From NCBI RefSeq assembly GCF_023055435.1, contig NW_025964024.1, positions 3,410,001-3,474,000 on the forward strand: DNA of 64,000 nucleotides, given 5' to 3'. A model generated the notes under the pieces. That model searched no databases, was not told the origin of the DNA, and worked only from the letters and a program-made list of their open reading frames with translations. Positions within the stretch are counted from its first letter, which is position 1. Every line of letters starts with the position of its first letter. A program made the position numbers and the translations under genes. This document shows positions 23,289-58,000 of this stretch, piece by piece. The stretch comes from Haliotis rufescens (Eukaryota).

Positions 23289-26200
23289 ATGGCGAAACAG
23301 TTGAAACCTGTTCAACCTAAGCCGTTCTCTCGAGTAACAGAATATAGATCTAGTCCTGAACTCATTTTAGAAGTAGAGTCCGTTGCTGGTGACAGTGACA
23401 ATGGAAGACATATGGACAGCATTTCCTCCGAATCTGTTATAGGGGAAGTGTATGAACCAGAAATGTATTATGATGACGCAGAGGAGGCTGGGGAATCGGA
23501 GTCGGAATCCGAGCCCGAACCGAACCCCATGGACACAACCGAATTCACAACTCCTGATCGCCCATTGAAGTTTACCGTCAAACTCCTACTTGACTGGTGT
23601 CAGAAAAACAACGTTAACGTCGATCTAAAAACTATAAAACCTGCCGCTCTTGATCAAATTCTGTGTCGATTTTATGTTGAAGTTCGGAGTAAGGTCGGTC
23701 AACGCTACTCGAGAAATACTATCGTTGCAATAAGATATGGTCTAAATAGGTATTTCGCAAACATGGTACCTCCAAGAAAGATGGACATTATTGAAGAAAA
23801 AACATTCAGGTATTCCAATGCAGTGTTCAAACGTGTTGTTAAAAGTGCCGCCAGAGAAAACCCAGACAGAACAAGCCCCCGAATGACGACTGAAGACCTG
23901 AGGAAAATTTACAATAGTGATGCAATAAGCCCCAATACCCCACTGACCCTTCTGCTCAAAGTGTGGTTTGAAATCAGCGTGTACTTTTCTAGGAAAAGAT
24001 CCAAAGTCCAACGGGAAACCAAAACGTCAGACTTCATCTTTGACGTTGACAGCGACGGACGTCGTTATGTAACCGGGGCACTTAGAGACGAGGAACGTGA
24101 CCGATGTCGGATGTATGAGAAGAAAGGTGATGAGATGTGCCCCATTTTATCCCTGGAGAGGCTTCTGACGAGAATCGACCCCAACTGTCAGTTTCTATTT
24201 CAGCGTCCACGACTGTCCATTCCCGACAGAAAAAGCGCATGGTATCACCCCGAGCGGATCGGCAGAAACTTCACTTCTCAGATGATGGGGAAGATAACCA
24301 AACTAGCCGAGCTTGATACGAAGTACACAAATGTTTCAATGAAGAAACTAGCACCCTGGTCGTTGGAGGAACTTGTTTTCCAACATAGGTATCAAGTCAG
24401 ATCTGTACAAAACGCACAAGTTCAAGCTGTAGTTTCTTACGACACGTCATCTACAGGTGGACAAAGCTTTGTTCCCGCTGATAGATCCCTACCCCCAGCC
24501 GTACTCCCAGCTGATAGATCCCTACCCCCAGCCGTACTCCCAGGTGACTCAACCAAGTCAGTTGGCTGCAACACAGAGGAAGAGAGGGGAGCATTCCGTC
24601 CATACGTTAGACGGAAATCACAGACGAAATCAGACAGGAAAGGTCAGCATATTATGGGTAAATACCACTCCATATTATATATATCAGGTAATACTATCAC
24701 AGAGAGTGAATGGGTTTGGTTTAATGCTGCCTTGAACAGTATTCCAGTTCTATCACGGCGTGTCAGCTTGGTGTGGGAGGAAAGCCAAAAGAGATGCAGG
24801 TCAAGACGTTTTCCACTTTGGTGAAACCCACAGGTATGGTGTGCTGTGAAACCTAGAATCATAGTCAGGGTGAACCGGGATTCGAAGTAGTTAATTGTCG
24901 TCCCTGCTACAATCCTGGTACCACATTATGCTAGTTGCGACTTATATATTTTACGCTGTGTCCGTGTCAGATTTGTGTATTCACTTACTGGCACAATATC
25001 ACATTTTCAGGAGGCCCCGACCCCTTAGATGTGAGCACAGCTAAAGCCAAGATAAAGCGGGTGTTCCAGCGCCTTGTGTACTCGGACCTTGTCACTGTGG
25101 TTGACTGGCTCAAGAGAATTGATGTTCTCAAAGATACTTCAGGTAAGCCAACACGAACGTCAGGCACTGCCATGTCATTAAATAGAGGAATTTGTAAAAT
25201 GAATTTATCACGTTTATGTGTATTATCAACCCGAAGTGATGCAGGTCTCAGACGTTTGCCACCTCGGTGAAACCCACGAGCACGGGTATGGTGCTGACAA
25301 ACCTAAAAACATAATCGGGGCGAACCGGGATTCGAACCCACAACCATAGGTTTCTGGCCTGCCCAAGGGACGCAACTCTGCACAGCGACACTGGGCCACC
25401 GGTGCCCCCACAATGGGGAAAACAGTGTAAGAAAGTAAACGCTTAATTAAAAGTACGTATTTTGATGTCTTTATTAGTAGGTGGGGTGAAATTGGGTGTG
25501 TTGTGACTTGTTACGTGAAAGGTGGCTGACCTGCGAGAGTGCGAACGGAGGGGCGGTCTTGTGCAATCAAGGTGTAATTTGGGAGGTCATTTCCTCCAAC
25601 AAGGGGGCGGTCGGGTAGCCTAGTGGTTAAAGCGTTCGCTCGTCACGCCGAAGACCCGGGTTCGATTCCCGACATGGGTACAATGTGTGAAGCCCATTTC
25701 TGGTGTCCCCCGCCGTGATATTGCTGGAATATTGCTAAAAGCGGCGTAAAACCATACTCACTCACTCACTCCTCCAACAAGACCATATATGTATGTTTAT
25801 GGAGCATCTGTATATAAAGGCTCCGCCTCTGCTGTAGTTTCGTTTCAACTTTTGAAATTGATAGACAAGACAAAAGTGCAGATAAACCTTATTTACGTGC
25901 GCTTTCGATGTTTCTAATACGATATTTGCATTAACGATGTCACGATCTATCTGTATCTGCAAAGTTGTATATGTTACAGTCAGTGTGTAAAATATAATCA
26001 TCCACTTTGTAAAATGGACCCGTGAAGAACCCATGCTTGCTGTTAAAGTTGCCTATGCTTGTCGTAAGAGGCGACTAACGGGATCGGGTGGTCAGGCTCG
26101 CTGACTTGGTTGATGCATGTCATCATATCCCAACTGCGTGGATCGATGCTCATGATGTCAATCACTGGGTTCATCTGGGTCGTCCTGTTTTTAGGTTACA

Positions 26201-26978
26201 GTACCATGTATGAAGCGGTCATTGATTAGTGTGATCCTTGGGTCACTGAACACCCACTTGACTATGATGAATGCTGGTATAATATTCTTCAATATCATTT
26301 GTCATTGCAGGGATAGTCTTTTGTCGTGAAAACTGTCTTAGGATAATGGAACAGCCACCGAGAGCCCGCAAGTTCACCCCACAACAAGTCCATTCCACCC
26401 AGCCATCGCAGTCGGCCCTCAACCCCTACATCCTGCCATCTCCTCTCTCACTGTCACAGTACTACATGAACAACGCTATCAACACGGCCACTACTGGCGC
26501 ATCTCGACCGGCAGCCATCTTCTTTCCTCAATTCCCTCTCACGTCTCAGAACCAGACTACCATAAGCCTGGCATCACACGAGTCCTCTCTGCCAAGACAT
26601 GCTACACCATTAGTGAATGCCCCTATTACACCCAGACCCACATGCGAGGAACATTTTCAGTATCAAACAGGGTCGTCTGCGAATGCGTTCAAAAGTGCCA
26701 CGAATGACAAGCAGCTCGCCATAGCTCCAAGACGTGCCATCCCGGCAGCCACACCCAGTCACTCTTTTACCCAGGGTGCACAGCCCGCGACAGCGGACGA
26801 CAGCTCTTCTGCCACACCCTACAGTCTTGTAGCCCAAGCAAGAAACTGCGTTCTATTGGGTCGTCAACTGCAGAGCAACGTGGATTCTAGTGACTACACC
26901 ACAGCGGCAACATCGCCTCAGAAGAAACTTAAAATTTCCAATGTCACAGGTGAAAGTAAAGTTTGGAAGATTTTGTAA
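23289..26978 (+). CDS. Gene A: DUF3504 (Crypton tyrosine-recombinase-derived, KCTD1-like) protein, ~717 aa, 3 coding exons
   Basis: Start aaaATGG at 23289. Exons 23289-24642 (alternative in-phase donor 24657), 25011-25142, 26311-26978; both introns phase 1. Motifs LDQILCRFYVEVRSKVGQRYS, TPLTLLLKVWFEI, DSDGRRYV, RMYE..GD..CPI, FLFQRP, WY...IG.N, YTN match the Crypton/KCTD1-type domain. The last exon could instead splice at the 26950 donor. Confidence 0.82.
24474..24549 (+). repeat. Coding 33-nt tandem duplication (PADRSLPPAVL x2) in gene A
   Basis: gctgatagatccctacccccagccgtactccca repeated twice. Confidence 0.9.
25011..25142 (+). other. Symmetric phase-1 exon encoding the shared unknown domain (gene A)
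   Basis: ttttcag|...|gtaagc; encodes GGPDPLDVSTAKAKIKRVFQRLVYSDLVTVVDWLKRIDVLKDTS. Confidence 0.8.
25604..25769 (+). mobile_element. SINE family A
   Basis: Full copy, TSD tcctccaacaag. Confidence 0.9.
26017..26175 (+). mobile_element. SINE-like family B (3'-truncated)
   Basis: Similar to the 813 copy. Confidence 0.75.
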
Positions 26979-27830
26979 AACTTTCATCCGAGTTCAACTT
27001 GGAGAAATGTAGTCCACAGAGAAGACAAGACTGCCATATTCAGACTTTATCCAGAAATATACATCATGGCATACAGTCGGCTTTTGGTCAAACATATTGA
27101 CTTTATACTTGAGGAATCATTGACGTTGTTTCAATGTTTACCTTACTGACTCATTCCAATTGAGATCATGTGCATTTCAAGTATTGAACTGAGAATTCCA
27201 ACTTTCTATGAATGGTGTCCAAATTAAAATCATGTCAAATTAATACAGTTGAATTACAGACGCACGAAGGAAGCACAAAATACTCTAGAATATGATTTAT
27301 ATTAATAGATTGACTCACGAAACTAGTTCTACATAATCTACGTTCCACAAAAGTAGATGTGAGTGAGTTAGTTAAAATTAAACATCGCATCGGCATTGTT
27401 TCAACCATATAGCCACAGTAACTATAGCCGATGGTGACAAATGATATGTCTGTTATGTAGTCTAGTCTTTAGTCCGCCTGTTTTTTAACAGTCTGACTTG
27501 AACGTATCATTAGCATTTTCTTGAACAAAATATATAATAAACTGTCCGAAGGGTTAAGCCATACAGTACGTTTAGAGTATTAGTGTAATCCGATCCCATC
27601 GGAGTGTGTAGATACGTGGTTGGTTTTTCATTTTCACCTGCGGTTGTCTCCCCTTTCGGGTTTGCATGTTTGATTATTGCGGTTGCTCCCGTCGCTTCCT
27701 TCTTGGTAGTACTGCAAAGTTGTTTTATTGCATTTTGAAATAAAATCAATTACTGTATTTGTACTACGTGTCATTAATGCCTTATGGAATTATTATTGTC
27801 ATTGAGCTGTTATACACTTTCGTTATTAGA

Positions 27831-27992
27831 GTGAGTGAGTTTGGTTTTACGCCGCTTTTAGCAATATTCCAGCAATATCACGGCGGGGGACACCAGAAAT
27901 GGGCTTCACACATTGTACCCATGTCGGGAATCGAACCCGGGTCTTCAGCGTGACGAGCGAACGCTTTTACCACTAGGCTACCCGACCGCCCC
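27831..27992 (-). mobile_element. SINE family A
   Basis: Full copy, TSD tcgttattaga. Confidence 0.9.
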
Positions 27993-28029
27993 TCGTTATT
28001 AGAAAAGGCAATTGACTAACACATGGGGA

Positions 28030-28256
28030 TTCTGGGTAAGAATATTGGTCCCCAGCACCCAAGCTGTTCGTAAGTGTATCGGGTGGTCAGGCTCGCTGAC
28101 TTGGTTAATGCATGTCATTGCATCCCAATTGCGTGGATCGATGCTCATGATGTCGGTCACTGGATTGTCTGGTCCAGACTCGATTATTTACAGACCGCCG
28201 TCATATAGCTGGAATATTGCTGAGTGCGGCGTTAAACAACAAACAAACAAACAAAA
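28030..28256 (+). mobile_element. SINE-like family B
   Basis: Similar to the 813 copy. Confidence 0.8.
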
Positions 28257-30164
28257 AACTCTAAGCGTTGATCATTCAGTTTACGTATGTGTGCTATAAA
28301 CGTCTCTATAGTGTGGATCTGCTTATCTCTTGAGTTGTGCACGTATCTTGTCTATGTGACGCCATCCTGTGCATCACCGTGGTCTGTTAGCGTTGTTTAT
28401 TTTACTCAACACAATATAATCACAATGTTGACAATTGTACACAGGCACACCTGTAATGACAGATAGCGTTTGATATACCTTTTACTGACCAAGCCACATG
28501 ACACAACGCTAAACGGTGCTATTGCGCAATCACTATCACACACTAGGGGCGGTTAGTTAACACTGCTGTTATTTTTTCAATATATTTGAAAGACTGTTTG
28601 TAAAAATAACTGATTATATATATTGCTTGTATACTGCTGGCGCCATTAACATGTGGGTGAATGTTATTTGTACTACAGTCAATAGAACCAGGAGCACATG
28701 CTTGGCAGTCTGCAGCTTTGAACTCCGGATGTAAAGGTAAAATGGGATCGATCATTTATTGTTGGAGGGTGCTAATTTAGGAATCTGAATTCATAACCCC
28801 GCAGCTTAACACCGCCCACCCCCAGCCCCAGCCCCACCCCCTCTAGTAGTGCCAGCATCTCCCGTCTAACAATGCAAACCTTTTGTTTCTTTGCTTTAAA
28901 TATATTAACAAAATTATTTCCTAATTTTCTAAGATCCTCCCCTAAATAAATATGGATGTTTCATTACTGGTGATCTTGCGTTCCTCACTCCATCCAAATT
29001 GTCCAGTCCCAAAGATAGCACAGCGTCTGTTGTGCCCTTAAACCTACAGTGGTCACTATATCCTTCACTATCGCATAATGTTTGACATGTTTCCCTTTGT
29101 CTCAAAATAAGACTACCACTTTAACCTCTGGTGATGTAGACGTGATATAGATGACCATTCAGCCCCGTGTGCTGAGTAAAGGACGAGAACTCAACAGATG
29201 TATGTAATATCTAGAACTGGTCAATGTCAAGAAACGAAAACAGTGAACAGCGTGTTACAGTTAGATAATATGTGCACGTAGGCAAGATGTTATAGGCTAA
29301 AGGATGAACGTGGGACAATCTTATCCCAAAATGACATCCAATATATTTTCGTTTTCCGATTCGCCCGCTAATAAACAAAAACAGTTTTTAAATTCTTACT
29401 TTTCTCAAAGGTAAAAATAGTTAGTAAAACCTTAACTTATTATAGGTTATCACGCAATTTGATGAAACGTAAATACATAACGATTTCTTTATCAAATAAT
29501 GTTTTTTTTACGTACTGGATTTCTTTTGTACCTTTCGGATAAATGTGTGAGATACCTTCTGACTGACTTCCTAGACACATAGGACAAAGATGTTGGTTAT
29601 TTGTTACTGATTAATAACTAGCTTCATTTCAAAGTACGCAGTAGAATTGGCGAGAGGTAACCCAGATATGACAAGACCGAGAGCATAAGGAAACGGATAT
29701 TTCACTCTCACGGTCGTTTCCCAAAATAACTGAATTCGGTAGATAACTAGTCGTATCACACTCCTGATAATTCCCTTTGCGGCTGTTGGTTAACTTTAGT
29801 AACAGCTGTATATCAAACCTCTTGTTCTCATATATCGTGGAACATTCCGATAAGGCAGTATTCGACTGATAAATTCTCTGAAGTAGTCGACACGAGACCA
29901 GTTTATCATAACAGGCGCAGGAATATCCAGCGTTCCCTAACTCTTTATTGGATTCAAGCGATGTCCTTTATGTTAAAACAATAGATTCTGGAACTAAAGA
30001 AACAAATTCTTTTTTCTCGGTGAGCAAACTCTTGCGTTATAGAGTTGTCTTTCTTCCCATGTTTACCGACACCAGGTGGCTTCCGGTATCATGGCTGTCA
30101 ATCATTGAATAAGATTGTGTTGATTATGACTTTAGTAGTGATGTTGTGTTTTCATGTTTAAGAA

Positions 30165-33100
30165 ATGGACCCCACCAGCAAGGAAAGTGAAGAATCAACT
30201 AATGATGAGAAGAAGTCAGCGGTCGCGGGTTCAGATGTGCACCATGAGGCAGGAATCGGCGAAGAGAACGTGGAAGACGCTGATATTGATAACGAAGATC
30301 GTGATGATATTTACATGGTACCGGGCTCGAGTTCGGGAAACGGAGGGTCCGAAACCATGCATTCAAGCATGTTACGCATACCAACACCTGAAGAATCTAA
30401 TTTTCTCATGGAAAATAAAAATACAAACAGGAAAACTGGTGCAGATATGAAAATTCTTGTTAGCTACTTAAAATCTTTGAATGAAAAGCGCCCACCAGAA
30501 TGCATCCCACCTATAGAACTTGATAAATACCTGTCCTCCTTCTTCATGGTTGTAAGAAAGTTTGATGGAGCGGAGTATGAGCCCTGCAGCTTAAGGGCAA
30601 TGCTGGCTAGCATTGAGCGGTACCTGAAACTAAAATGTTACCCAACATCTTTGACCAGAGATATTCACTTTGCAAAGACAAGAGCTGCCTTGAAGCTCAA
30701 GCAACAAATGTTGAAACAAATGGGTAAAGGTGTGAAGTCACAGATATCATCAACATCACATGTCATGGAACAGAGATTGTCACAGTTATGCAAATCTCAA
30801 GAATTTGGACCTTACACCCCTGTGTCAGTGCTATTTTCTCTGTGCTTTGTTTTTGTTGTGAATTTAAAAATGAGAAAAGCAACAGAACACAAGAAATTGT
30901 TGTGGGGAGACATAATGTTAGGAGTAGAAGAGGAGTCTGGGAGGGAATATCTTGCATTTTCTCCACAAATGCTGCACAGAACAGCAAACAGTCACTTGCG
31001 TCAAGCCCGGCAGATGATATGGAGCAAGCCGGAGATACCAGAACAGGATCCTGTAGCTTTGTACAAATTATATGCAGAAAAAAGACCTATTGCTGCCAAT
31101 CACAGATACTCTCCATTTTACCTGGGTGTAAATGTGAATCAACCTGCCCCTGCTCAGTCATGGTATCGCCCTTGTGCTCTAGGTATGAACAAGCTTAATG
31201 AGATGGTGAGACAGATTCGTGACCTAACAGGAATGGCTGCCCAAGTTGCCCCGTCAGAGGGTACTGCTGTTGTAACAGGTGATGGAGACTCAAACTGTGA
31301 CTCTACAAATGCCTCATCAGTTGATAATGACGAGGGAGAATTGAACACAAGCCAGAATGACAGCTACAGTCGACAAGACAGTAAGGTGTCTGATGTTCTG
31401 GCATACCATGTGATTGCACAACCAGATTCTGAACTGGACTCTAGTGATAGCCTGTCCCATCAGTCCCTCTCATTTAATGAAGAAATAGTAGATGATGTTG
31501 CTGACCAACAGGACAACTGCCATGGAACTGTGTCAGGATACTCCACTGATGATAACATTGCTAACGGTAAGTTATTTTCTCTTCTTCCATGTACATGTGA
31601 TATAACCACTCATGTTTGTTGTAATATTTTGCATTGTTTTAGATAGTATCAGGCACAAATGCATTAACACTAGTAATGACTTTCAACTTTAGGCTATGTT
31701 ATTATGGTAAGTAGATTAGGATACTGTTTGCATGCAAACCATGCTAACCAATGCTAAGAGGGTTTGCATACTTTCCATATATTTTTCAGAATTATGTAAA
31801 TATTGGGAACACATAAACATGATAATGATGAGCATTTTAAGAAAGTATCTAAACATGTTAGTAGCCTACATTGTTGAACACAGTTCAGACTGTTCCAAGT
31901 TGAATTATTGCCGCATAAACATGGACCATAATCTCAAGTGATCCAGGGGTATCCCATTGGTTCACAGCTCAGAATAGTAGTTTCCGTATTCGACGTAATA
32001 AGCGCCCAGGGCGTACTCAAAATTAGAAATAGTGGGCTCTTATTAGTATATTATTTTGGTGAAAAAAACAGAGTTGAAAGATCATAAATTTCATGGTTTA
32101 TGCTGACAGCCTGAAATGATTAAATTGTATACGACAGATATATTATTCCAGAATTTAATTGCCCATAATTAAGGGTGCATATAACACACGAGTGTGTATT
32201 ATACACAAATAAATAAGTCTTGTGTACATTGATCAATCGGAAGGTGTGCTAATTGGGATTGATAGCCAATATATTAGCAAATATCGCCATGGGCGCTTAT
32301 TAGAGCGGGGCACTTATTACGTCGAATACAGTACATGCAGTATGTACAGAAAAATAAATTTACTTTTGGATAAGACAACCAGTCCGTATAGATTGTTACT
32401 AGTCTCTGACCAATGGACTAGTGGTTGTAATCTGTGTGATTTTATGCAGCTAGCATGACTTGTTACCCGACTTTCCGTACCCATGGAGAATTGTACCAAG
32501 CGAAAATAATTCAAAATGGCTAACCCGTACCTAATATTCTCGTCAGATTTGTACATGTATCATGATGTATTGGAGCATTTGTACTTTATCATGTTTATTT
32601 GGCTGACTCATACCCAAATTTGGAAGACCCTTACCGAATTTTGGATGACTCGTACCCGTTTATCTTTTGAAGCAATGTTTCCAAAACGGGATTGCCTTAA
32701 CCGGTATAGACTATAAAAAAAAATTTTAAAATATGTTTGTAATTGCTTTTTCTGCAGTAAATTCTCATATATTCTCATCTGCAAGTTCATCATGTTCATA
32801 GCAATTTATTCATAGCTCTATTACATTTCCAAAATTCAATCATTTTACATTTCAAATATTCACTGATTTCACATTTCCATTCCAACATTTATTCATTATA
32901 CATTTCAAACATTCATTCATTAGTTGGTGAATGAACGATCAGTCAATCAACTCAATGCAAAGTGACAATGAATGACTTCTAAACAATCATTTTACCTCTT
33001 TAATATACCAGTAACATTAGGATTAAATAGATTTGAGTTAACTCAGTTGGCTGTGGTGGCATGTTGTTGATTTACCGTAGTATGTAAACTATCAAGGTCT

Positions 33101-36100
33101 TGGAAGCCGGACGGTGTAACAAAAAGTTTACACAGCTGCTGATCATGTGATTGGAGTCCTCATGTGTTCTTGTTATGAAACCAAAACAATCAATGTCTTA
33201 GTAGCTGAAAACATGATTAATGTTTCATGTTTCAAACCATATATTTTTTCATTGGGTACAGATTCTCTTTTTTGGGTATGGGTCATCTAGCTCAAATGGT
33301 TCAAAGCTGTATGTTACCTTGGTTTCTCTCTGTTTTAATTGAAAGTAACACAAATCATCAATAAACTTTTATATCATGTATATATCTGTTCTGACACAGA
33401 TGCATTGATTTTAATACCCCCAAACTAAAAGGGCGTGGTTATATAGTAGGGGTGAATAAATACGTCGGTCCACCGGTGCATCATGAGTTTTCATGTGATG
33501 AAACATTTTTGTCAGTCGGATATCGCAGAATGTGTTGTAATTAGCGTTTTAACATGTTTAAGTTCACTACTAAAAATAGCCACAACGAACATGTGTCTAC
33601 AGCAAACTTATACTTTTGAACCTGCTCATTTGATACACATCGTGTCTTGACCTATGTATCATGATACGTATCATATCATGACCTTGCTGTATCGTTACAC
33701 CCCTAGTAAATAGTTATTCCAAGGAATTCTGTCCGTCCTTCCAAGGACATTTTTTGTGCGACCTATAACTTGAAAACTACTAAATAGATTCTTTTCACTT
33801 GGTGAACACTTTTTATACCTATATGAAAGGTGCAATGCAAAGTTTGATTTCAGTGTTTGGATTTTCTGAAAAAATACAGCTTTTTTTCATTTATTTTGCT
33901 TAGAATGTTTTTACTTAAACATTTGTGCAATGTATCACTTGAAAACTACTACATGGATTCTTTTCAAATTTAGGGAACAGTGTCTATACCAATATAAGAG
34001 GTGCAGTGCATAGTTTAATTTTAATATGTGTATTTGCTGAAAAAGTATGATTTTTTTCATGATTTGAACGTAGTATATTATTTTACTTAAACATTTGTGT
34101 GGCCTCTTACTTGAAAACAACTTCATGGATTCTTTCCCAATTTGGGGTACAGTTTCTATACTGAAAGAGAGGGCCAGTGCAAAGTTTGTTTTCAATAAGA
34201 AATCTTTTTGCCTTTTTTATGTTTTGAACTTAGAAATATGTTGGACTTGGAAGTTTCTGCTAGCCATATATGTCTTGCAGTCTGATCTGTGATATGCACA
34301 GTTCGTTTGCCCGACGTGGGTACAATGTGTGAAGCCGTGATATTACTGGAATATTACTAAAANNNNNNNNNNNNNNNNNNNNNNNNNNNNNNNNNNNNNN
34401 NNNNNNNNNNNNNNNNNNNNNNNNNNNNNNNNNNNNNNNNNNNNNNNNNNNNNNNNNNNNNNNNNNNNNNNNNNNNNNNNNNNNNNNNNNAGCACATAAA
34501 TTTGCTTTTTCAGAATTATTTTCCACTTTATATAATAACTATTTTAGTGTCCGTGGAATCTGTATACCAGTTTTGTTTTTCTTGCCTAATAATTCTAATA
34601 ATATACAATTATGTGAGCTGTAGCCGTGTATAGTGCCAGTGCTATCCCATAGATATTCGTCAGTGAGGACATAAAATAAAACATGAAAGATTCTTAGGTT
34701 GTTCGTGTACATTGTTGTAAGTTGTAATGTTCAAGTCTGTTATAAAAATGGTCAAAATAGCGACTTTGTACGGGTCATCTGATTGCTTGCTCTGTTTAAT
34801 ATAATCATGATAATGATGTGATGTTATAATAGGCAGTGTTAGAATTTATATAGGGATCCTTCCCTGGGTTTGTTGTTAGACTATTGAAGAATCTAAGGAC
34901 CATCTGAGACTTTAGTTTAGACATTACGGTAATCATCGTAGGATGGTCATTGTAATGGAAAGGACACCTTGATGTTTATTCTTACTTTTTAACACTGGAT
35001 ATGTTTTCTTTTCTTTCAGAACCTCACCATTCAGAGCACACTGATGATATTGATTTAGCTACAGCTAAACATCAGCTCTCTGGGATTTTGCAAAGGATGG
35101 ATATTTTGGATCTGGTAGCGTTTGACCAGTGGTTGAAGAAAATGAAGATTGGTCGCGACACTGCAACAGGTACTGTTTGGTTTTATGTCATCAATCTAGT
35201 ATATCTTCACAGGTTGCTTGACTCAAAGCAAGTTCATGTGCATATTATTCTCACAACCCTGCATTCTGATTACCGTATTCGAGGTAATAAGCGCCCAGGG
35301 CGCTCTCAAAATTAGAAATCGGGGGCTCTTATTAGAATATTATTTTGGTGAAAAACACAGAGTTGAAAGATAAATTTCGTGGTTTATGTTGACCGCCTGA
35401 AATGTTTATGTACGACAGATATATTTTTCCAGAATTTCATTGCCAATAATAAAGGGTGCATATAATACACGAGTGCGTATTATACGCGAATAGGAGAAGG
35501 AAGGGGTATGTACTATAAGGGAATAGGGTTCGGAAGAGGTGCTAATTGGGATTGTTCACTAGCCAATATATTAGCAAATCTCGCCGTGGGCGCTTATTAG
35601 AGCGGGGCGCTTGTTACGTCGAATACGGTATATGTCAGCGATAGAAATTGGCACTAGTCCTATAGTTCCTGTCAAACTACCCAATAGTTTAGTTATCATA
35701 AGGACAAGTAGAAATTTGCCATTTTTAAGGGTTTTGCTATACGTTATTATAAGGACTAGTGGACGAAATATGTTAGTTTTTATAGCTGTGTGTAATACAC
35801 ATACCTTGTGAAGTTGTCATGGCTAATATCTACCCTCAGTACTATACTGCATGGTATACTGCTATACGCTTTTCAAACAATACATATTGCATTATTTTAC
35901 CTGTGTTCCGGTATATTGGGTAAAAAAATTATTACAACTCCTGTATTATCATGATTATTTGTATTATCATGATTATTTGTATCGTTTAACCTTAATTCTA
36001 AACAGAAATTCATTCACAAATTATGTTTCCCTTTGACATGAACTGACAAAATGGCGGAAACGCGGAAGTGATTTTCCCTCACATTCTTATCTCCCCTGTA

Positions 36101-37022
36101 TCTATGACTACAAAATGGTGGCGTCTGACCATGTTGACTTTTGACATTGTAATATTAATTTTAGAAGGTACAAAATAGGATCTGCGTGTACGATCGGTGT
36201 CAGATCGATCACAGTATATTGCAATACAATTGTTTTGCCAATACACAGCCCTAATCAACAGCTAATCTTGTATTTACAGGTGAGATAGTCTGCCGAGAGG
36301 ATGGACGAGGGATGCAGAGTGTCAGTCAACTGCTGTCCCGCAAGAGAAGTCATGATTCTGATGTCCTTGACCTTAGCCCAGACAAGACTAAGTTAGAAAG
36401 TCTGCAAGAGTCAACCAATATCACCCTCAACATCTCCCTCACCCCACAGGCTCTCCTGGGTGGGGGACCAGTCACAGTCACCGCCCACACTTCCAGGGCG
36501 CCTCCCGTCACAGACATCCCTGACGATGGCCCAGCCCAGAACAAGAATCAAGACAAAATACCACCCACAAAATCCAGCACTCCATCTGGGATAGCCAAGT
36601 CAGTGTATCCTATTCACATCATCCCCAACGCCACATCCGAAAGCAGTACAACGAAATATTCACGTCTTTCACCAGGTGTGACCAAAAGAGAAGGACTATA
36701 TTCTTACAGCAGCATCGCAGCACGGGGAGGATCGAGTTACCTGAGACAGTTGACTTCTGGACACGGGACCGCTGTGTCCAGTAACTCTGGCCGCCCAGCC
36801 ACCTCCACCCACCACTCCACACTCTCGCACAGATCTGAACCTTCCATAGTCAAGACAGTGCTGCAGCAAACCCTTCGCCCCGCATCCAAGGCAGATTTCT
36901 CTCATTACTTGTCTAGATCCATGTATCACCATCCTACCAGCAGTAGCCTCACCAATGGGCATTCAGCTATTATACCAGAACCAGGTTCGGGACCAGTCTT
37001 CCCCAAGCCTGAACCAGTTTGA
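30165..37022 (+). CDS. Gene B: DUF3504 (Crypton-derived, KIAA1958/ZMYM/QRICH1-like) protein, ~764 aa, 3 coding exons
   Basis: Exons 30165-31566, 35020-35169, 36280-37022; both introns phase 1. Motifs NTNRKT..DMKIL..YL, ELDKYLSSFFMVVRKFDGAEYEPCSLRAMLASIERYL, EH..LLWGD, GREYL, DPVALYKLYAEKRP, SPFYL, WY...LGMNKL. An N-gap lies in intron 1, so an extra exon cannot be excluded. Confidence 0.82.
31984..32331. mobile_element. MITE family G copy 1
   Basis: TIR ccgtattcgacgtaataag; three similar ~350-bp copies in the window. Confidence 0.85.
33447..33705. mobile_element. hAT-type MITE
   Basis: Termini taggggtg...cacccta with gatac/gtatc subterminal repeats. Confidence 0.6.
33720..34210 (+). repeat. 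Degenerate ~170-bp tandem array (Helentron/HINE-like internal repeats)
   Basis: Recurrent ttttacttaaacatttgtg..acttgaaaactact..gattcttt..ggtgca.tgca.agttt, preceded by a gtcc microsatellite. Confidence 0.5.
34363..34490. other. Assembly gap (128 N) next to a partial SINE A
   Basis: Run of N. Confidence 1.
35020..35169 (+). other. Symmetric phase-1 exon encoding the shared unknown domain (gene B)
   Basis: ctttcag|...|gtactg; encodes ..DIDLATAKHQLSGILQRMDILDLVAFDQWLKKMKIGRDTAT. Confidence 0.8.
35273..35628. mobile_element. MITE family G copy 2
   Basis: TA|ccgtattcga...tcgaatacgg|TA. Confidence 0.85.
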
Positions 37023-47054: not shown

Positions 47055-47125
47055 ATCTACGTCGCTATATAAGTGCAATAATCTTGGATGGGACACCTCA
47101 CCTCACCTCACCTCACCTCACCTCA
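46757..47125 (+). mobile_element. SINE family C with expanded (CA)n and (CTCAC)n tail
   Basis: Similar to the 16527 copy. Confidence 0.8.
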
Positions 47126-47721: not shown

Positions 47722-47724
47722 TTA

Positions 47725-47757
<33 letters not shown>
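47722..47757 (+). repeat. (ATT)n microsatellite
   Basis: Read directly. Confidence 0.9.
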
Positions 47758-47760
<3 letters not shown>

Positions 47761-48479: not shown

Positions 48480-48737
48480 ACCCGTGAAGGGCCAGGTTAG
48501 AATAGGTCTTCATGCAGCCCATGCCTGCCGTAAAAGGCACCTATGCTTGTCGCAAGAGGCAACTAGCAGGATCAGGTGGTCAGGCTCGCAGATGAATGTC
48601 ATCGTATCCCAAATTGCGTGGATTGGTGCTCATGATGTCAATCACTGCATTGTCTGGTCCAGACTCGTTCATTTACAGACCGCCATCATATAGCTGGAAT
48701 ATTGCTGAGTGCGGCATTAAACAACAAACAAACAAAC
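48480..48737 (+). mobile_element. SINE-like family B
   Basis: Similar to the 813 copy. Confidence 0.85.
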
Positions 48738-49388
48738 TTTGTGTCAGGCTATGTGTCCAGTGGTTTGAGCATTCACTTGTCATTCAAACATTCTGGGTTT
48801 GATTCCCCACATGGGTAAAAGTTGTCATGCCCATTGTTAGTGTAATGACTTTTTATCGTGGCATGGTCCTGTGCACAGCACACAGGTCACAGGGCACACG
48901 TCTAAAGCTAAGTAACATTGGTTACTGGCAGCTGGATTCCAAGAGTTTTTACCGCTTTGATCCTGGCCCATGCCGAGGCACATGTGGTGTCACCCTAAGC
49001 GTGTGGCTTTGTTCGTAATATGCCTCTATTCACCCAGCAGTGAATGGGTACCCGGTAGGATGAGATTTTATCCTTACTGTTAACCTTCTAGCACTTCACA
49101 GGTAGCTTGGGTTGTATACTCCCCAGGGAGCTGAGAATGGAAATCGAGTGCACACTGATCCATTGACCGGGGGAAAAATAATGTAGCGCCATGAGCATTC
49201 ACTTGGTGAATGGAATTTGGTGCATTATAAATGTAATCATTATTAAAAAAACCAAGCTGTGATGCTGGTAGTTCTATCTGGGTGAATGTGAGATGAAAGC
49301 CTCCTGAACTGACACACGTAGAACTGTGGTGAAACCAATGTGTACTGGTATACTTGACAGACCAAGAATCTTAAATGGGACAAATCTG

Positions 49389-49553
49389 TGGGGTGGTCTG
49401 GTGGTTAAAGCGTTTGCTCATCACGCCAAAGACCCAGGTTCGATTCCCGACATGGTTGCAATGAGTGAAGCCCATTCCTGGTATTCCCCCCCGTATTATT
49501 GCTGGAATATTGCTTAAAGCAGCGTAAAACCATACTCGCTCATTCACTCACTC
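49389..49553 (+). mobile_element. SINE family A (diverged)
   Basis: Similar along its length to the 25604 copy. Confidence 0.8.
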
Positions 49554-49654
49554 ATTGTGATTCGAACTTGCAATCTGCAGATCCCTGTCCAGTAAGAGGC
49601 AACTTTGAACAGGTACCAGTAATTGTGTTTCCCTGGATCATTGGGCCACCCTAG

Positions 49655-49892
49655 GACCTGTGAAGATCTGGGTCAGAATAGGTCTTCAGCAACCCATGCT
49701 TAGCGTAAGAGGGGACTAACAGGATCGGGTGGTCAGGCTCGCTGATTTGGTTGATGCATGTCATGGTATTACATTTGCGTAGATCGATGCTCATAATGTC
49801 AATCACTGGATTGTCTGTTCCAGACTCGATTATTTACGTACCACCGTCATATAGCTGGAATATTGCTGAGTGCGGCGTTAAACAACAAACAA
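49655..49892 (+). mobile_element. SINE-like family B
   Basis: Similar to the 813 copy. Confidence 0.85.
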
Positions 49893-52083: not shown

Positions 52084-52527
52084 TAGGGCTGGGACAGGTA
52101 ACTCGGGTACTCCGGTCGGTTGGTTCATGAGTAGGACCCGGATACCCACCGGACTTGCCGGACCCGGATACCCACCGGACTTGCCGGACCCGTGGTAAGT
52201 CACGTGATATATTGTTTAATGGTAAAAATTATCTAGAACTTCCACGGTTACACTATGAGTGACTAATGTTCGAATTTTTTTCTGACTATGCACCCATTCC
52301 TTCTGACTTTATATGTTTGAATAGAGATAAAACTTCAGTCAACTTCAATGTATGCAAGACTAGATCGTATCTAAAGTATCTAAATACATTTTGCCAGGGC
52401 TACGGTCAAACTATTCCCAACCGGACATTTGTACCTATCTCTTTAGACCTACAGCGGGTACCCGGGTAGGGTCGGGTAATATTGGGGTGGGTACAAGGGT
52501 AGTAAATTTGGACTTGTCCCAGCCCTA
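52084..52527. mobile_element. hAT-type MITE (5'-truncated relative at ~57845-58198)
   Basis: TIR tagggctgggaca; 8-bp TSD tcattagt/tcatcagt. Confidence 0.85.
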
Positions 52528-52966
52528 TCATCAGTATCAAAAATGTAATTTTATTTTTTTGGTATGTCCACAATGGCCATGAAATAACATGTCCACACAG
52601 TTTCAACTCAAGCGAAAGTATTTTGTTCTTGTTATTCTGTAATCGTAAACTAGGGACCAAACATGCTAAAGGCAAAATTGTGTTCAAAGAATAGTTGAAG
52701 ATATAAAAAAAACTGACGTTATGGAACACATAGTAAAGTTGAATTTTACTCAGGTTGACACCAATACAAGCATTCTGCATCCTTATCACAGAGGGTCAAC
52801 CTTGAACCTTCATCACCAATCTTCCCACATTCACCAATCTGGGAAATCAAACTAGGTCCTACAGCATAGTAAGCAAACACATAAACCACTGGGCTACCCA
52901 ACTGGGATGGATATAATGCATAGGCTAGGCATAAGAGACCACACTAAGGTCAGACTGATCTACACA

Positions 52967-53117
52967 TATACTACTAAAAAGAAGTCAAGGAACACTCGAT
53001 TCTTTCATATTACTATAGTTAATCTGTCATGGAAGTAAGGGCCACCCAGTGCCATGACAGATTGACTCTAGTAATAGGAAAGAATCGGCTGGTCCGTAAC
53101 TTCTTTCGAGTAGTATA
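52967..53117. repeat. ~150-bp palindromic (foldback) element; partial relative ~40708-40813
   Basis: tatactact..aaagaagt..gattcttt..tattacta..aatctgtcatgg / ccatgacagatt..tagtaata..aaagaatc..acttcttt..agtagtata. Confidence 0.75.
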
Positions 53118-55043
53118 AGTAATCGAGTAACTGGTGATATTATGGCTTTGGTCGGCATTGAATAGTGATATTATTGACATACACAATAGTATCAAAGTAA
53201 TGAGGAACTGGATACGGGGACCAAGTCTACAATCTGTACAGCATTAGTTACTGCTACTCCTCAACAACATCCTGACAAAAAAACACTGAAGGATAAATAA
53301 AGAGAAAGTATGGACATACAGAATGGTACCAAGTCGTACTGCATGTAGTCAAATATTACAATGCAAATTTTGGTTTATGTTATTTGCAATGTCTATCTAA
53401 TTTAATTACACACCCGTTCTTACAATAAAAAAATTCTAGCATTTGATTCGTGTAGGTTCTAATGCATGTGAGAGCATTTCCTGAAAACTGTCGACGCCAT
53501 GGCAACGGTGTCTGTACCCATTGATTCACAGATTCAAGTCCTCAGGGGGCAAATATGGTAATGAGAAAAAACAGGACTATTTACGGATTTTCATACTGCA
53601 TGCTAATTCAAAATTTGATCACATAATTATTAGAGAAAAATATTGAAACATGACATAGGTAAATATTAAAGGTTAGCATGCTCAGCTCACAGCAACCCGT
53701 CCAAGACAAATAAATAAGAATTGGTCTAACTGTTAGTTCTGTTAAATGACAAGCTTGTTCGAAACGTTGAAAAAATGTTGTATGAAATTGTGGTCAACAA
53801 ATAATACCAAACTTGTCGCACTTAACAAATTAAAAACTTTTAACATTTGTTTCAAAAACATTTTGAAGACTTTCTACATCCTGTCTTACATGACACTTGA
53901 ATGACAACATTAGCAGAAACTTATTTCAGCTTCATGGTGAACAAACCACCCTATCTGTAACCCATGACGTATGTCTGAACTACACATTCTAAAATATTAA
54001 GTATTGATAACTGATTAAGAATTCTAAAAAGCATATCAATATGGATAATTTGGACAATATTATTGACATATAAAATGTCAAATGTCAAACCTCCACTAAA
54101 AATAGTTATTGGATAGCATCTAAAGTATATCTTGAAGACCAAATTGCAAATATATTAACATGGTAAATATAACTTACATCATGTCTACATTTGAGTTAAC
54201 AAAATATATAAGTTTTTGGTATGCTCCACCCATAACAAACAAAATAAGATGGGTCTGTCTTCTTTTCTGCCAGCACATCTCATCATACAACAAACCTTGG
54301 TCTCATTCAAGCACACATCACGATTATCAACAGAAAATCAAAGGAACAAAAAATAAAAACATTTACCAAAATATTGTGTCCATACAATATTGTTATGTGC
54401 AGGATGGACAGTGCCAAGGATTACCTCCCTTTTCACAAACAACATTCAGAAATAACCCACTATACAGATGTATTTCTTAACTGCTGCTGTTAAATTTATA
54501 CATAATTAGCAATATTTAAAAAACTGTTGAAATGGACAAATATTGGTACCATCTAAGACACCTGGTATCTGTATGGCAGAGAAAGCTAGCTTCATGAATC
54601 ATGTGGTTACACAACACACAGTCTATACATACAATAATCCACCACTAGCAAATGCACCACTGGTGAACAGAAGCCCATATCTAGGTGTGACTTCATGTAC
54701 AATTATATATCACAACATTCTATGATATATCTCATATGTACATATTAAACATCATAATCACCGGATGTAATTGCATGTCATCATTGTGTCAACCTAACTG
54801 ACCTTTCTGAACACAAGTCACCTGTGAACACATGGGCTCTTTTACCCACAATTCTCCTCTCATCTCCACGGTAACGGCTCAAATGGGCTCAGTTGTCGGC
54901 CTCTGCTCATCTCCACCTGCAAACCCTTACAATATACAGGGCTGCTTTGGTGTATCAGCAAGGCTGCAAAACTGACTTGCCGTGAGGCAAAATATCACTT
55001 GCGAGTGATAGAATTAAAACCCAACAAACGGTACCTCCATACC

Positions 55044-58000
55044 TCATGATACTGGCTCAGCTTTTACTGTTATAGTCTGAACCCCACTGCCAAATCGCAC
55101 TCTCTTTTTCTTCATAAGTGGGGAGGAATCTAACGAGGCTGGTCTGAACTGCAACGGTGGTTTCGGAATGTTGGTTGTGTTGGGATAGGCAATTCCGTGG
55201 TCTGCTCCTACTGGCACACTAGCACTAGTACAAAGTCTTTTCTTCAGAGGTTCGTCATTAGCCGGCTCAGCACACTCCACCCGCGCCTGTCTCTTCAACG
55301 CTGGACTGGCTGGTTTCAGTGACGACTGCTTATTGTCACCGATAGTTATCAACTTGTTTTCCCCACCGAAGGAAATTGTGTTCTGAATGTTAACCGCACC
55401 ACTCCTTATCTCGGGCATCGAGTCAGCTTTTAGGTTGGGACTTCTCGTACCAGCGTGCGGCAAAGCCTTACTGATTTCGGCTACAGTTGATTCCGTTTTG
55501 TCTGGATTCTTTTTAAGACTGTCACACGCACCCAAGAGGGCAGCAATCTCGGCAACGTCCATGTCATTCTCGGAGTAGAATATTCTGTCCGGCAGTTTTT
55601 CCTGCATGGGCTGCTCCTTCGAGGATTTCTTGTGTAGCAACAGCTGCATATTCTCGCTCAGACCAGACACCAGCAGTGCGTCGGCCGAGGGAATGGTCAC
55701 CTTCAGCGGGGAGATATCACTGGACGAGCAGTGGGTTCCGCCAACTGAGTCAAACTCTACTTGCTTAATGGAAATTCCCTGCATGAACGATAAACCATCT
55801 TGCTTGTCGCTACGTGCTGATTTTTCATTTTTCTTCTGCATGGGTGAGTCCAAACTGGTGGATGAGAATTTACCAGGTCCGTTTTGTTTGAACTTCTCTT
55901 TTATTGAGGTCATTTCTTGATCACTGACTTTGCTCTGAGAGTTGTCTGCCCCTTGACCATTCATCCCTTCCACCGCCACCTCCTCCTGGTCGACAGGGCT
56001 ACACAAGACAATCAGCTCTGAAACAACAGATCAACATCACAAACTGGTATTAATTGTAATTTATATTCTGCCCTAAGACAAAAATACCTTGTTAATCTTC
56101 CTATGCCTACTCATTACAGTAATTCTCATGTAATAAATATTCTTAGTAATTATAATGAGCAAACATTATTTCTAGTTTGTAAATTCTTATATTATGCTCA
56201 CAAAATAATTAATGATAAATTCTGTGCCCTGTAAATGTCATGCTCACATGTCTGTATTTTGGGCCATTGGCCTTTTACTGAATAAACATGTCTGTCTGTC
56301 TGTCTGTCTGTCTGGTATTAAGATATTTCAAACAATTTCATGAGTAAGTACGGATAACAATGTTTAGACAAGTGTTTTAACTTTCACTGTCACAAACATG
56401 TTTGCTTGTTTTAACACCACACTATATATTCTAGCTATATGATGGTGACCTGTAAAAAATGGCCCTGGACCATATATCTAGTGATTGATATTGTGAACAA
56501 CAATCTACACCATCGGGTTCCAACAACATGCAATCAACCAAATCACTAAGTCTGACCACCCAATCTTCTCTTACGACGAGCAACGGTTGCTAGGGACCTA
56601 CATCACAACAGGGCAAACACATATCAGCAGTAATGTGTGGTGTTTGATTTGCTTGTTTGTTGTTTAACGCCGCACTCAGCAATATTCCAGCTATATGACG
56701 GTGGTCTGTAAATAATCGAGTCTGGACCAGACAATCCAGTGATTGACATCGTGAGCATCGATCCGCACAATTGGGATACTATGCCATGCATCAACCAAGC
56801 CAGTGAGCCTGACGACCCTATCCTGTTAGTAGCCTCTTACAACAAGCATAGTGGCCTTTTACGGCAAGCATTGGTTGCTGAAGACCTATTCTACCCCGGA
56901 TCTTCACAGGTCGCACATATTTAAGCTGTAATGTGTGGCGTGTGAGGAGAAAACAAGACAACCAGGGTCTCGTTCCACAAAGCGATCTTAGCGCTAAGAA
57001 GACTGTAACTCCAATACTTTAACATGGGCTTACGACAGTCGTAGCGCTAAGATGACTGTAACTCCAATACTTTAACATGGGCTTACGACAGTCGTAGCGC
57101 TAAGATGACTGTAACTCTAATACTTTAACATGGGCTTACGACAGTCATAGCGCTAAGATGACTGTAACTCCAATACCTTAACATGGGCTTACGACAGTCG
57201 TAGCGCTAAGATGACCGTAACTCCAATACTTTAACATGGGCTTACGACAGTCGTAGCGCTTCCATTGCTTTGTGGAATGGGACCCAGGTTATAACGGGTA
57301 ACACTTCTGCAAAACACATGAACATGGGTATGGTGCTGACAGACAAAAAAAAATCACAGCAAATATTGGATGGGAACCTTGCAGGGTCTTGCTTCTTCGC
57401 ACAGACAACACCTCAGACCATGGTGGTCATCCATATTTACCAAACTCTCTCTACAATTTTTACGACCAACATTGAAACATGCTTGACATAACTGGTATAC
57501 AATATTTGTATGGATAACACAACATGGATGACATGGAAATCAAGCCTACCTCCTTGGTGGTATTCCACTCGAACAGTTTTCAGCCAGTCAGCAAACTTCT
57601 TGATGTCCTTTACAAGTAGGCCACGAATCAACTCCAAAACCTTCATCTTGGCTGATCTCAAACCTGGAACAATGGTCATCATGCTGGTTAATAACAACTC
57701 CGTGCAAAACCATGGCAACCATTCGCTAACTTTCATAACAGCCTGTAATCATGAAAATACATCATCATAATCTGAATCACCCCTGAAAATTGCGTTGTGA
57801 TGAACGTTGGTTCATGTTATATTTTTAACATGACCGTGTCTGCCACAGGACTACCTGGACCCGTGGTTAGTCATGTGATATATTGTTTAATGACAAAAAC
57901 TTACTATAGCTCAGTGGTTACACTACAAGTTGCTAATATTCGCAATTCTTTTCCAACGATACATTCCTTTTGACTTGTATATGATTGAGTAAAGATAACG

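What the first reader, a model, noticed from the sequence alone, without database searches (positions are those of the whole stretch)
25011..57663. Unrecognised ~45-aa domain encoded by a symmetric phase-1 exon in all three DUF3504 genes
Seen only after splicing. A: DVSTAKAKIKRVFQRLVYSDLVTVVDWLKRIDVLKDTS|GIVFCRE. B: DLATAKHQLSGILQRMDILDLVAFDQWLKKMKIGRDTAT|GEIVCRE. C: GLRSAKMKVLELIRGLLVKDIKKFADWLKTVRVEYHQG|ELIVLCSP. AK, D, WLK and the hydrophobic periodicity align without gaps over ~33 aa, then G..hydrophobic..C continues across an equivalently placed intron, while the flanks are unalignable. Exons are 132, 150 and 114 nt, all phase 1-1. Inference: two amphipathic helices plus a beta-hairpin, plausibly a homo/hetero-dimerisation module analogous to the BTB of KCTD1, and skippable in frame. 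I cannot assign it to a named family.
Basis: partly seen in the sequence, partly recalled or inferred. Interest (0 to 1): 0.85.

Follow-up and report, generated by a model that had tools for sequence, protein, structure and literature searches.

The report
Unnamed helical pairing module, abalone genes
Three neighbouring red-abalone genes descended from a domesticated Crypton transposon share a real, so far unnamed protein module of about 50 residues, conserved in snails and bivalves, which computer models fold as two helices plus a hairpin and pair into a dimer.

Summary
The window is Haliotis rufescens. The three exons (A 25011-25142, B 35020-35169, C 57663-57550) have canonical AG/GT borders and are phase 1-1. 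Spliced transcript contigs from four runs join B exon 1 to exon 2 to exon 3. The N gap therefore lies inside an intron and hides no exon.

The module is homologous across the three genes: hhalign gives A-B E 1e-10, B-C 8e-8 and A-C 2.6e-6 over 46-53 columns. It is more conserved than its flanks in every family. It occurs in gastropods and bivalves, so it is ancient. The abalone genome has at least 150 DUF3504 matches but only these three module copies.

Pfam, a PDB sequence profile, Foldseek, VIA-align and the ESM Atlas give no named family.

AlphaFold2 predicts helix-helix-strand-strand in B (pLDDT 79-90) and in a C orthologue (69-79). A homodimer model of B residues 470-532 scored 0.67 against a best control of 0.02, with the invariant residues at the interface. 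That supports dimerisation but does not show it.

No exon skipping was seen. I rate this a real new lineage-restricted domain, a new variant of the known "DUF3504 plus oligomerisation domain" design, of moderate interest.

The parts
23289..24657 (+). Gene A (LOC124116630) exon 1: N-terminal region, QRICH1-like domain and DUF3504-like domain, ending in phase 1. Isoform X2 uses an alternative donor after 24642.
   Evidence: tblastn of P0038 at 100% identity; donor ATG G|GTAAAT; Pfam QRICH1 23.7 bits and DUF3504 16.2 bits, both below cut-off; phmmer to fish KCTD1 long isoform E 2e-36; isoform difference.
25011..25142 (+). Gene A module exon, 132 nt, phase 1-1: helix 1, helix 2 and strand 1 of the module.
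   Evidence: 97% identical among 3 Haliotis species against 80% and 61% for the flanks.
26311..26978 (+). Gene A last exon. Its first codons (26311-26330, G-I-V-F-C-R-E) supply strand 2 of the module. The rest is a low-complexity tail ending at the stop.
30165..31566 (+). Gene B (LOC124116631) exon 1: QRICH1-like domain, DUF3504 and an acidic Ser-rich linker, ending in phase 1.
   Evidence: Pfam DUF3504 64.8 bits; tblastn of P0001; RNA joint 31566>35020.
34363..34490 (.). Assembly gap (N) inside intron 1 of gene B. It is not part of the module.
   Evidence: Spliced contigs skip 31567-35019 as one GT..AG intron in 4 runs.
35020..35169 (+). Gene B module exon, 150 nt, phase 1-1.
   Evidence: AlphaFold2 H480-493, H496-508, E509-513 at pLDDT 79-90.
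36280..37022 (+). Gene B last exon. 36280-36299 encodes strand 2 (G-E-I-V-C-R-E). 36417-36491 encodes a second conserved beta-hairpin block. 36999-37019 encodes the tail F-P-K-P-E-P-V.
60585..61311 (-). Gene C exon 1: N-terminal region, QRICH1-like domain and the first part of DUF3504; donor in phase 1.
   Evidence: CCA G|GTAGGT.
59514..59912 (-). Gene C exon 2: the rest of DUF3504 and an acidic linker; phase 1-1.
   Evidence: acceptor TTGCAG|GA, donor GTT G|GTGAGT.
57550..57663 (-). Gene C module exon, 114 nt, phase 1-1.
   Evidence: tblastn of C-family orthologues at 61-70% identity, E down to 3e-11.
55044..56017 (-). Gene C last exon. 56017-55995 encodes strand 2 (E-L-I-V-L-C-S-P). 55775-55530 encodes a conserved beta-rich block plus helix specific to the C family. 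55073-55047 encodes the tail I-T-V-K-A-E-P-V-S.
   Evidence: Model of the orthologue P0059.

Best explanation
Shown: the three small exons, together with the first 6-7 codons of the following exon, encode one homologous protein module of about 50 residues. Its pattern is an acidic lead-in, h-x-x-A-K, an amphipathic helix, D-h-x-x-F-x-x-W-L-K, a basic strand, a loop with Gly, and h-h-h-C. It is attached by a long disordered acidic linker to the C-terminal side of a Crypton-derived QRICH1/DUF3504 domain, which is a catalytically dead tyrosine-recombinase domain. It is transcribed, at least in gene B. It is under purifying selection in three paralogous families, two of which (B and C) predate the gastropod-bivalve split. 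No named family matches it.

Inferred: it folds as helix-helix-beta-hairpin and works as a self-association module. Two copies pack their four helices into a symmetric bundle. The small Ala of the A-K motif and its Lys on helix 1 sit against Asp, Phe and Trp of helix 2 of the other chain, and Leu-Lys of W-L-K sits on the two-fold axis. This would bring two DUF3504 domains together. That is the same logic as the BTB domain fused to DUF3504 in vertebrate KCTD1 isoform b, and it echoes the dimer or tetramer state in which tyrosine recombinases act on DNA. Because the interface residues are shared by A, B and C, mixed pairs of the paralogues are possible but untested.
For: Exon and splice structure.

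Annotated proteins and spliced transcripts.

Homology of the three copies: A-B E 5e-10; cross-family HMMs; hhalign 88-97%.

Conservation of the module against its flanks:
- A: 97% against 80% and 61%.
- B: 39% against 17% and 11.5%.
- C: 74% against 25% and 37%.

Phyletic spread: Babylonia, Littorina, Patella, Lottia, Pecten, Saccostrea, Mytilus, Aplysia, Biomphalaria, Elysia, Lymnaea.

Fold: (pLDDT up to 90).

Dimer: score 0.67, best of 3 controls 0.02. The runs agree in at least 89% of contacts and the partner pLDDT is at least 80. The mark was reached by 21 of 30 proteins solved as pairs of one chain and by 0 of 23 solved as single chains. On eukaryotes it was reached by 17 of 29 pairs, but by only 1 of the 7 with no older solved relative, and by 0 of 30 single chains.

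Invariant residues A483, K484, D498, W505, L506 and K507 all lie in the predicted interface. Between-family conservation is higher at interface residues than elsewhere (mean BLOSUM62 1.8 against -0.1, one-sided Mann-Whitney p 0.007).
Against: - Dimerisation rests on one structure-prediction job, on one family, on an isolated 63-residue piece, without an alignment.
- Small amphipathic helical hairpins have exposed hydrophobic faces that predictors readily pair. The same face could instead bind another part of the protein or another protein.
- The interface covers 33 of the 50 residues, so the conservation test partly measures only 'structured against loop'.
- The calibration counts are small and weak for eukaryotic proteins without solved relatives.
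- The conserved Cys is Phe in the H. asinina and H. rubra B orthologues, so not every conserved position is essential.
- No experiment exists.
Confidence: 0.5

Rival explanations
1. The module is a docking site for something other than itself. Its hydrophobic face binds another region of the same protein (the DUF3504 domain, or the conserved beta-rich block downstream) or an unrelated partner such as a chromatin co-factor. The predicted homodimer is a surrogate for that contact.
For: In B and C a second conserved beta block lies 20-90 residues downstream, predicted as strands at pLDDT 56-69. The module is tethered by a long flexible linker, which suits reaching back to another domain. Tyrosine recombinases use C-terminal segments that dock on a neighbouring catalytic domain (textbook knowledge of Cre and lambda Int; not tested here).
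Against: Gene A has no detectable second block, yet its module is 97% conserved. hhalign does not align block 2 between B and C. The homodimer model is confident and symmetric and passes its controls.
Confidence: 0.25
2. The module is a small DNA- or RNA-binding element, a helix-turn-helix with a beta-hairpin 'wing', that gives the dead recombinase sequence or structure preference.
For: Helix-helix-hairpin order. Conserved basic residues lie in and after helix 2 (W-L-K, then K/R-rich strand 1). DUF3504 proteins such as ZMYM2 and ZMYM3 are chromatin-associated (papers listed).
Against: There are only two helices, preceded by a strongly acidic stretch. The most conserved positions are hydrophobic or buried in the predicted dimer. 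There is no Pfam HTH or winged-helix match at E<=10 and no structural match of Z>=5.
Confidence: 0.1
3. The module is a degenerate EF-hand or S100-like helix-loop-helix.
For: The best PDB sequence-profile hit is S100-A13 (E 0.04, 16.9 bits). It aligns helix 1, helix 2 and the loop to S100 helix II, helix III and the calcium loop. Gly and a hydrophobic residue fall at loop positions 6 and 8.
Against: The E-value is marginal. Loop position 1 is Arg, Leu or Val and positions 3 and 5 are not consistently acidic, so the calcium ligands are absent. There is no exiting helix and no paired second EF-hand. No Pfam EF-hand match at E<=10.
Confidence: 0.05
4. The similarity is chance or compositional, and the exons carry no shared domain.
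For: BLASTP finds no alignment between C and A or B.
Against: Cross-family profiles, hhalign, conservation relative to the flanks, identical intron phases and identical position in the gene all argue against it.
Confidence: 0.01

Closest known systems
Vertebrate KCTD1 isoform b (Crypton-derived DUF3504 fused to a BTB/T1 oligomerisation domain; Kojima and Jurka 2011, PMC3212892)
   Same: Same design: an N-terminal single-exon DUF3504, a disordered linker, then a self-association domain. Gene A's DUF3504 is closest, outside Haliotis, to the fish KCTD1 long isoform (E 2e-36, about 30% identity). Both also end in a psi-K-x-E-P tail.
   Different: The C-terminal domain is not a BTB. There is no Pfam BTB_2 match. 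hhalign against fish KCTD1 BTB+CTD gives probability 0.1%. The module has about 50 residues and is predicted to form a dimer, whereas KCTD BTB domains have about 100 residues and form pentamers (my knowledge).
RIIa / Dpy-30 docking-dimerisation domains and the CENP-B dimerisation domain (short helix-turn-helix units that pair into four-helix bundles)
   Same: It works alike in the model: about 40 residues of two amphipathic helices form a symmetric four-helix interface. CENP-B is also a domesticated transposase with a C-terminal two-helix dimeriser (my knowledge, not tested).
   Different: No sequence match to these Pfam families at E<=10. The module has an added beta-hairpin. The geometry of the bundle could not be compared because no coordinates of the dimer model are available.
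S100 / EF-hand helix-loop-helix
   Same: Weak profile similarity over helix, helix and loop (E 0.04).
   Different: The calcium ligands, the exiting helix and the paired hand are absent. No Pfam support.
C-terminal trans-docking segments of tyrosine recombinases (Cre helix N)
   Same: A helical element C-terminal to a recombinase-fold domain that may mediate protomer-protomer contacts (my knowledge; an analogy only).
   Different: It is separated from DUF3504 by 55-110 disordered residues and encoded by its own exon. It is absent from the other DUF3504 copies of this genome (at least 150 matches).

Membership tests
Pfam DUF3504 (PF12012) / QRICH1 (PF25561): the host genes, not the module | Match to the family HMM above the gathering score | tested here: met
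   Gene B scores 64.8 bits against a cut-off of 29.7. C-family orthologues score 32-39 bits. Gene A is below cut-off (16.2 and 23.7 bits) but matches the DUF3504 part of fish KCTD1 at E 2e-36.
BTB/POZ, KCTD T1-type (PF02214) | Sequence or profile similarity of the module region to the KCTD BTB domain or the KCTD1/15 C-terminal domain | tested here: not met
   No Pfam hit. hhalign of the A, B and C regions against fish KCTD1 BTB+CTD gives probability 0.07-0.15%.
EF-hand / S100 | Twelve-residue loop with acidic or polar ligands at positions 1, 3, 5 and 12, flanked by entering and exiting helices, in a paired arrangement | tested here: not met
   Position 1 is R, L or V. Positions 3 and 5 vary. 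There is no exiting helix and no second hand. The PDB profile gives only E 0.04. No Pfam EF-hand match.
RIIa / Dpy-30 docking-dimerisation domain | Match to PF02197 or PF05186 | tested here: not met
   Neither family is reported at E<=10 for 18 module peptides or at E<=5 for nine full-length proteins.
RIIa / Dpy-30 docking-dimerisation domain | X-type four-helix-bundle homodimer | not testable with these tools
   The dimer model passes, but no coordinates or bundle geometry are returned.
Any solved fold | Structural match clearly above background | tested here: inconclusive
   The whole-fragment model of P0059 gave at best Z 3.4 (VIA wide) and E 0.07 (Foldseek). The module alone could not be folded and searched, because no reference covers it without crossing an intron. 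A 50-residue unit rarely gives significant scores.
New module family itself (A/B/C type) | Motif A-K ... D-h-x-x-[FV]-x-x-W-[LF]-K ... G-x-h-h-h-C, located after DUF3504, with phase-1 introns before it and inside it | tested here: met
   All three window genes meet it. Orthologues in gastropods and bivalves carry the motif. Intron positions in orthologues are only inferred, from read-through residues of single-exon ORF calls.

The most novel reading that the evidence does not exclude
The module is a previously undescribed homo- and hetero-dimerisation domain found across molluscs. It has been coupled to Crypton-derived dead recombinases since before the gastropod-bivalve split. Molluscs and vertebrates (KCTD1b with its BTB) would then have independently given domesticated Crypton recombinase domains an oligomerisation handle, which points to oligomeric DNA or chromatin bridging as the selected activity of DUF3504 proteins.
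Probability: 0.35. Interest if true: 0.55.

Novelty: new variant of a known kind. Interest (0 to 1): 0.45.

Why it matters
DUF3504 genes (KCTD1b, KIAA1958, ZMYM2/3/4, QRICH1) are ancient domesticated Crypton recombinases. Several are linked to human disease, and the molecular role of their DUF3504 domain is still unknown. Kojima and Jurka (PMC3212892) found no conserved sequence beyond the recombinase domain.

This is a compact, strongly conserved extra domain found only in three linked mollusc paralogues out of at least 150 DUF3504 copies in the genome, and it is predicted to self-associate. It gives a testable hint that bringing two dead-recombinase domains together is what selection keeps. 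It also defines a new small domain family that annotation pipelines currently miss. The scope is limited to one lineage and the function is unproven, so the interest is moderate rather than high.

Tried and rejected
Hypotheses tested and rejected:
- Homology to the KCTD1 BTB or C-terminal domain: hhalign probability about 0.1%.
- EF-hand or S100: only E 0.04 and the ligands are missing.
- Metal site through the conserved Cys: the Cys is Phe in two Haliotis B orthologues.
- Homology of the downstream 'block 2' between families B and C: hhalign does not align it. It remains unproven rather than disproven.
- Exon skipping: no exon 1 > exon 3 joint was listed for gene B (contigs drop rare variants). 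The annotated isoforms of gene A and of Babylonia C differ only by 5 and 2 residues at alternative splice sites.

Searches that gave nothing usable:
- Pfam on ORFs, on full-length proteins and on 18 module peptides.
- ESM Atlas.
- VIA-align wide and Foldseek PDB on the P0059 model.
- A further search for copies in the own genome, with two profiles, found only the three known ones.

Limits of what could be done:
Genomic loci of orthologues, and therefore their intron positions and synteny, could not be read.
- The H. rufescens protein of gene C could not be fetched. Its largest single exon is too short for the length filter of the search for homologous proteins.
Exons were searched by reference one at a time, and whole database proteins were used instead.
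- A local join of gene C exons made for an alignment was off by one base. It was discarded and not used.
- The N gap was neither filled nor looked up.
Full report
WHAT IS THERE

The window is from Haliotis rufescens: the best database hits are its own annotated proteins. It holds three genes with a QRICH1-like plus DUF3504 (Crypton tyrosine-recombinase-derived) N-terminal half.
- Gene A (LOC124116630, plus strand) has exons 23289-24657, 25011-25142 and 26311-26978.
- Gene B (LOC124116631, plus strand) has exons 30165-31566, 35020-35169 and 36280-37022.
- Gene C (minus strand) has exons 61311-60585, 59912-59514, 57663-57550 and 56017-55044. That makes a 737-codon frame.

Pfam finds DUF3504 in B at 64.8 bits. 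A scores below cut-off, but its DUF3504 part matches the long isoform of fish KCTD1 at E 2e-36.

CHECKING THE OBSERVATION

For gene B, contigs of four runs from one study lie on exon 1, exon 2 and exon 3, with GT..AG joints 31566>35020 and 35169>36280. Because they are spliced, these contigs derive from RNA.

The same result settles the assembly gap at 34363-34490. It lies inside intron 1 of gene B, 530 nt upstream of the module exon, and the transcripts bridge it without any further exon. I did not fill it or look it up.

For gene C I could not fetch the species' own model. C-family orthologues from Lottia, Patella, Babylonia and Saccostrea match the four exons in order and read straight across the same junctions.

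IS THE SIMILARITY REAL?

- A and B align by BLASTP (E 5e-10, 37% over 41 residues). C does not align to either by BLASTP.
- A profile built only from ten B-family orthologues picks out the A exon (E 3.7e-9) and the C exon (E 2.6e-5) among 1258 stop-to-stop segments of the window. The next segment has E 1.3.
- A C-family-only profile finds A (E 4e-4) and B (E 5e-3), and the next decoy has E 0.56.
- Profile-profile comparison gives A-B 97% (E 1e-10, 51 columns), C-B 94.5% (E 8e-8, 53 columns) and A-C 88.6% (E 2.6e-6, 46 columns).

A joint alignment of 24 sequences has no gap over the first 42 columns. Nothing outside this stretch aligns between families.

CONSERVATION AND SPREAD

A three-sequence profile searched against 1.84 billion representative proteins gave 26 hits at E<=0.001. 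Two are unrelated repeat proteins. The other 24 belong to the A, B or C families.

- Named B-family members come from Babylonia, Littorina, Patella, Lottia, Pecten and Saccostrea, and from Mytilus with a degenerate motif.
- Named C-family members come from Plakobranchus, Elysia, Aplysia, Lymnaea, Biomphalaria, Candidula, Babylonia, Patella, Lottia and Saccostrea.
- B and C therefore predate the gastropod-bivalve split. A was found only in Haliotis.

In each family the module is more conserved than its surroundings:
- A: 97% against 80% and 61% in the flanks.
- B: 39% against 17% and 11.5%.
- C: 74% against 25% and 37%.

The abalone genome has at least 150 six-frame DUF3504 matches, but two module profiles find only these three exons. 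The module is therefore not a general Crypton part.

Some B-like DUF3504 proteins (P0008-P0015, taxa unknown) lack it.

Single-exon ORF calls from other species start after pyrimidine-rich read-through and end in G-G-K or G-G-M, as expected from G|GTAAG and G|GTATG.

IS IT A KNOWN DOMAIN?

No tool gave a named family.
- Pfam gave nothing over the module in the window ORFs, in nine full-length proteins at E<=5, or in 18 module peptides at E<=10.
- A profile search of PDB sequences gave S100-A13 at E 0.04 as its best hit. The calcium-binding positions are not kept and there is no exiting helix, so I do not file the module as an EF-hand.
- The ESM Atlas returned nothing usable.
- The model of a natural C-family fragment without DUF3504 (P0059) gave no structural match: VIA-align wide had best Z 3.4 and none at or above 5, and Foldseek PDB had best E 0.07. 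The module is a small part of that model, and it could not be folded alone by reference. The structural search is therefore weak evidence of novelty.
- Kojima and Jurka (PMC3212892) state that nothing beyond the recombinase domain is recognisably conserved among Cryptons and DUF3504 genes. The other DUF3504 papers listed were not opened, apart from a keyword look-up in PMC13465315, which returned nothing on such a module.

FOLD AND MECHANISM

AlphaFold2 on gene B's whole protein, with 26 aligned relatives, gives H480-493, H496-508, E509-513 and E520-524. Block means of pLDDT are 84, 90, 86, 79 and 71, inside otherwise disordered sequence. On the C-family fragment the same order appears at pLDDT 69-79.

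A homodimer job on P0001 residues 470-532 gave a score of 0.67 in all three runs, against 0.02 for the best of three controls. The runs agree in at least 89% of contacts and the partner pLDDT is at least 80.

The calibration of that mark is as follows:
- It was reached by 21 of 30 proteins solved as pairs of one chain and by 0 of 23 solved as single chains.
- On eukaryotes it was reached by 17 of 29 pairs, but by only 1 of the 7 with no older solved relative, and by 0 of 30 single chains.

The best-defined contacts put F502 against A483, K484 and L480 of the other chain, and W505 against K484 and L480. L487, L506 and K507 meet their own symmetry mates. D498 touches L480 and A483.

These are the positions invariant across the three families. 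Between-family conservation is higher inside the predicted interface than outside it (p 0.007), although the interface covers most of the structured residues.

I therefore take self-association through a symmetric four-helix interface as the most likely function, at about even odds. The main rival is that the same face docks on another part of the protein or on a partner.

COMPARISON WITH KCTD1

Gene A's DUF3504 really is KCTD1-like. The module itself is not related to the BTB or to the KCTD C-terminal domain.

SKIPPING

Skipping any of the three exons would keep the frame, which is simple arithmetic. It would leave the last strand, encoded by the next exon, without its partners.

No skipping joint was listed for gene B. 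The annotated isoforms keep the exon: A X2 uses a donor 15 nt upstream, and the Babylonia C X1 and X2 isoforms differ by 2 residues at the acceptor after the module. Contigs drop rare forms, so rare skipping is not excluded.

VERDICT

This is a real, transcribed, ancient protein domain restricted to molluscs, with no named family. It is confidently predicted as helix-helix-hairpin and plausibly acts as a dimeriser. It is a new variant of the known 'domesticated Crypton recombinase plus oligomerisation domain' theme. Interest is moderate.

The scan's other notes on this stretch (s1-807619 and s1-807787) agree with what I found. In my tblastn, B's DUF3504 finds neither A's nor C's, while A and C find each other, yet the module is detectable between A and B.

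PROCEDURE

A local join of gene C exons was off by one base and was discarded. Read laying was given 5801 letters.

Noticed in passing
window 36999-37019 (gene B) and 55073-55047 (gene C); proteins P0003, P0007, P0057, P0068; fish KCTD1 P0042 and P0044: The proteins end in a similar tail of the SUMO-consensus type (hydrophobic-K-x-E-P). B ends P-K-P-E-P-V and C ends V-K-A-E-P-V-S. Lottia C ends L-K-Q-E-P-V-D-T and heterobranch C has V-K-x-E-P-L-D. Babylonia and Littorina B end L-K-Q-E-V-D/E. Fish KCTD1 ends I-K-Q-E-P-L-D. This could be a shared modification site or convergence.
   Followed up: no
window 36417-36491 (gene B); P0001 residues 563-590: A second conserved block in the B family (N-I-x-L-N-I-x-L ... 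G-x-x-P-V-T-V-T-A-x-T) lies 20-40 variable residues after the module. It has 54% mean identity among ten molluscs and is predicted as a beta-hairpin at pLDDT 56-69.
   Followed up: partly
window 55775-55530 (gene C) and orthologues; P0059 residues 236-319 and 550-573: The C family has its own longer conserved region after the module: several strands plus the helix M-D-V-A-E. Heterobranch orthologues also carry a highly conserved C-terminal helix predicted at pLDDT 88. hhalign did not align this region to B's block 2.
   Followed up: partly
window 31882-32463 and 35180-35761 (introns 1 and 2 of gene B): Two related intronic repeat copies draw very large summed contig depth in the RNA runs (up to 2e5), with many short contigs and joints between the two places. 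This looks like a high-copy, transcribed repeat family.
   Followed up: no
G000 contig C323, about 3.19-3.52 Mb, and genome-wide: There are at least 150 six-frame DUF3504 matches in the genome, many with stops (Crypton-like copies). A dense cluster on contig C323 has open frames of 500-925 aa. None of them carries the module.
   Followed up: partly
window 24642 / 24657: Gene A isoform X2 uses an alternative phase-1 donor 15 nt upstream (AAA G|GTCAGC). This removes G-Q-H-I-M just before the module.
   Followed up: yes
window 60585/59912: Gene C's DUF3504 is split by a phase-1 intron (E-R-P-G|D-P-R-C-P), whereas A and B encode the domain in one exon. All coding introns of the three genes seen here are phase 1.
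   Followed up: partly
Lottia scaffold of 5,155,532 bp; Babylonia chromosome of 56,239,584 bp: The B-family and C-family orthologues lie on the same scaffold in Lottia (P0017, P0068) and on the same chromosome in Babylonia (P0003, P0086). This hints that the B-C linkage seen in this window is old. Distances could not be read.
   Followed up: no
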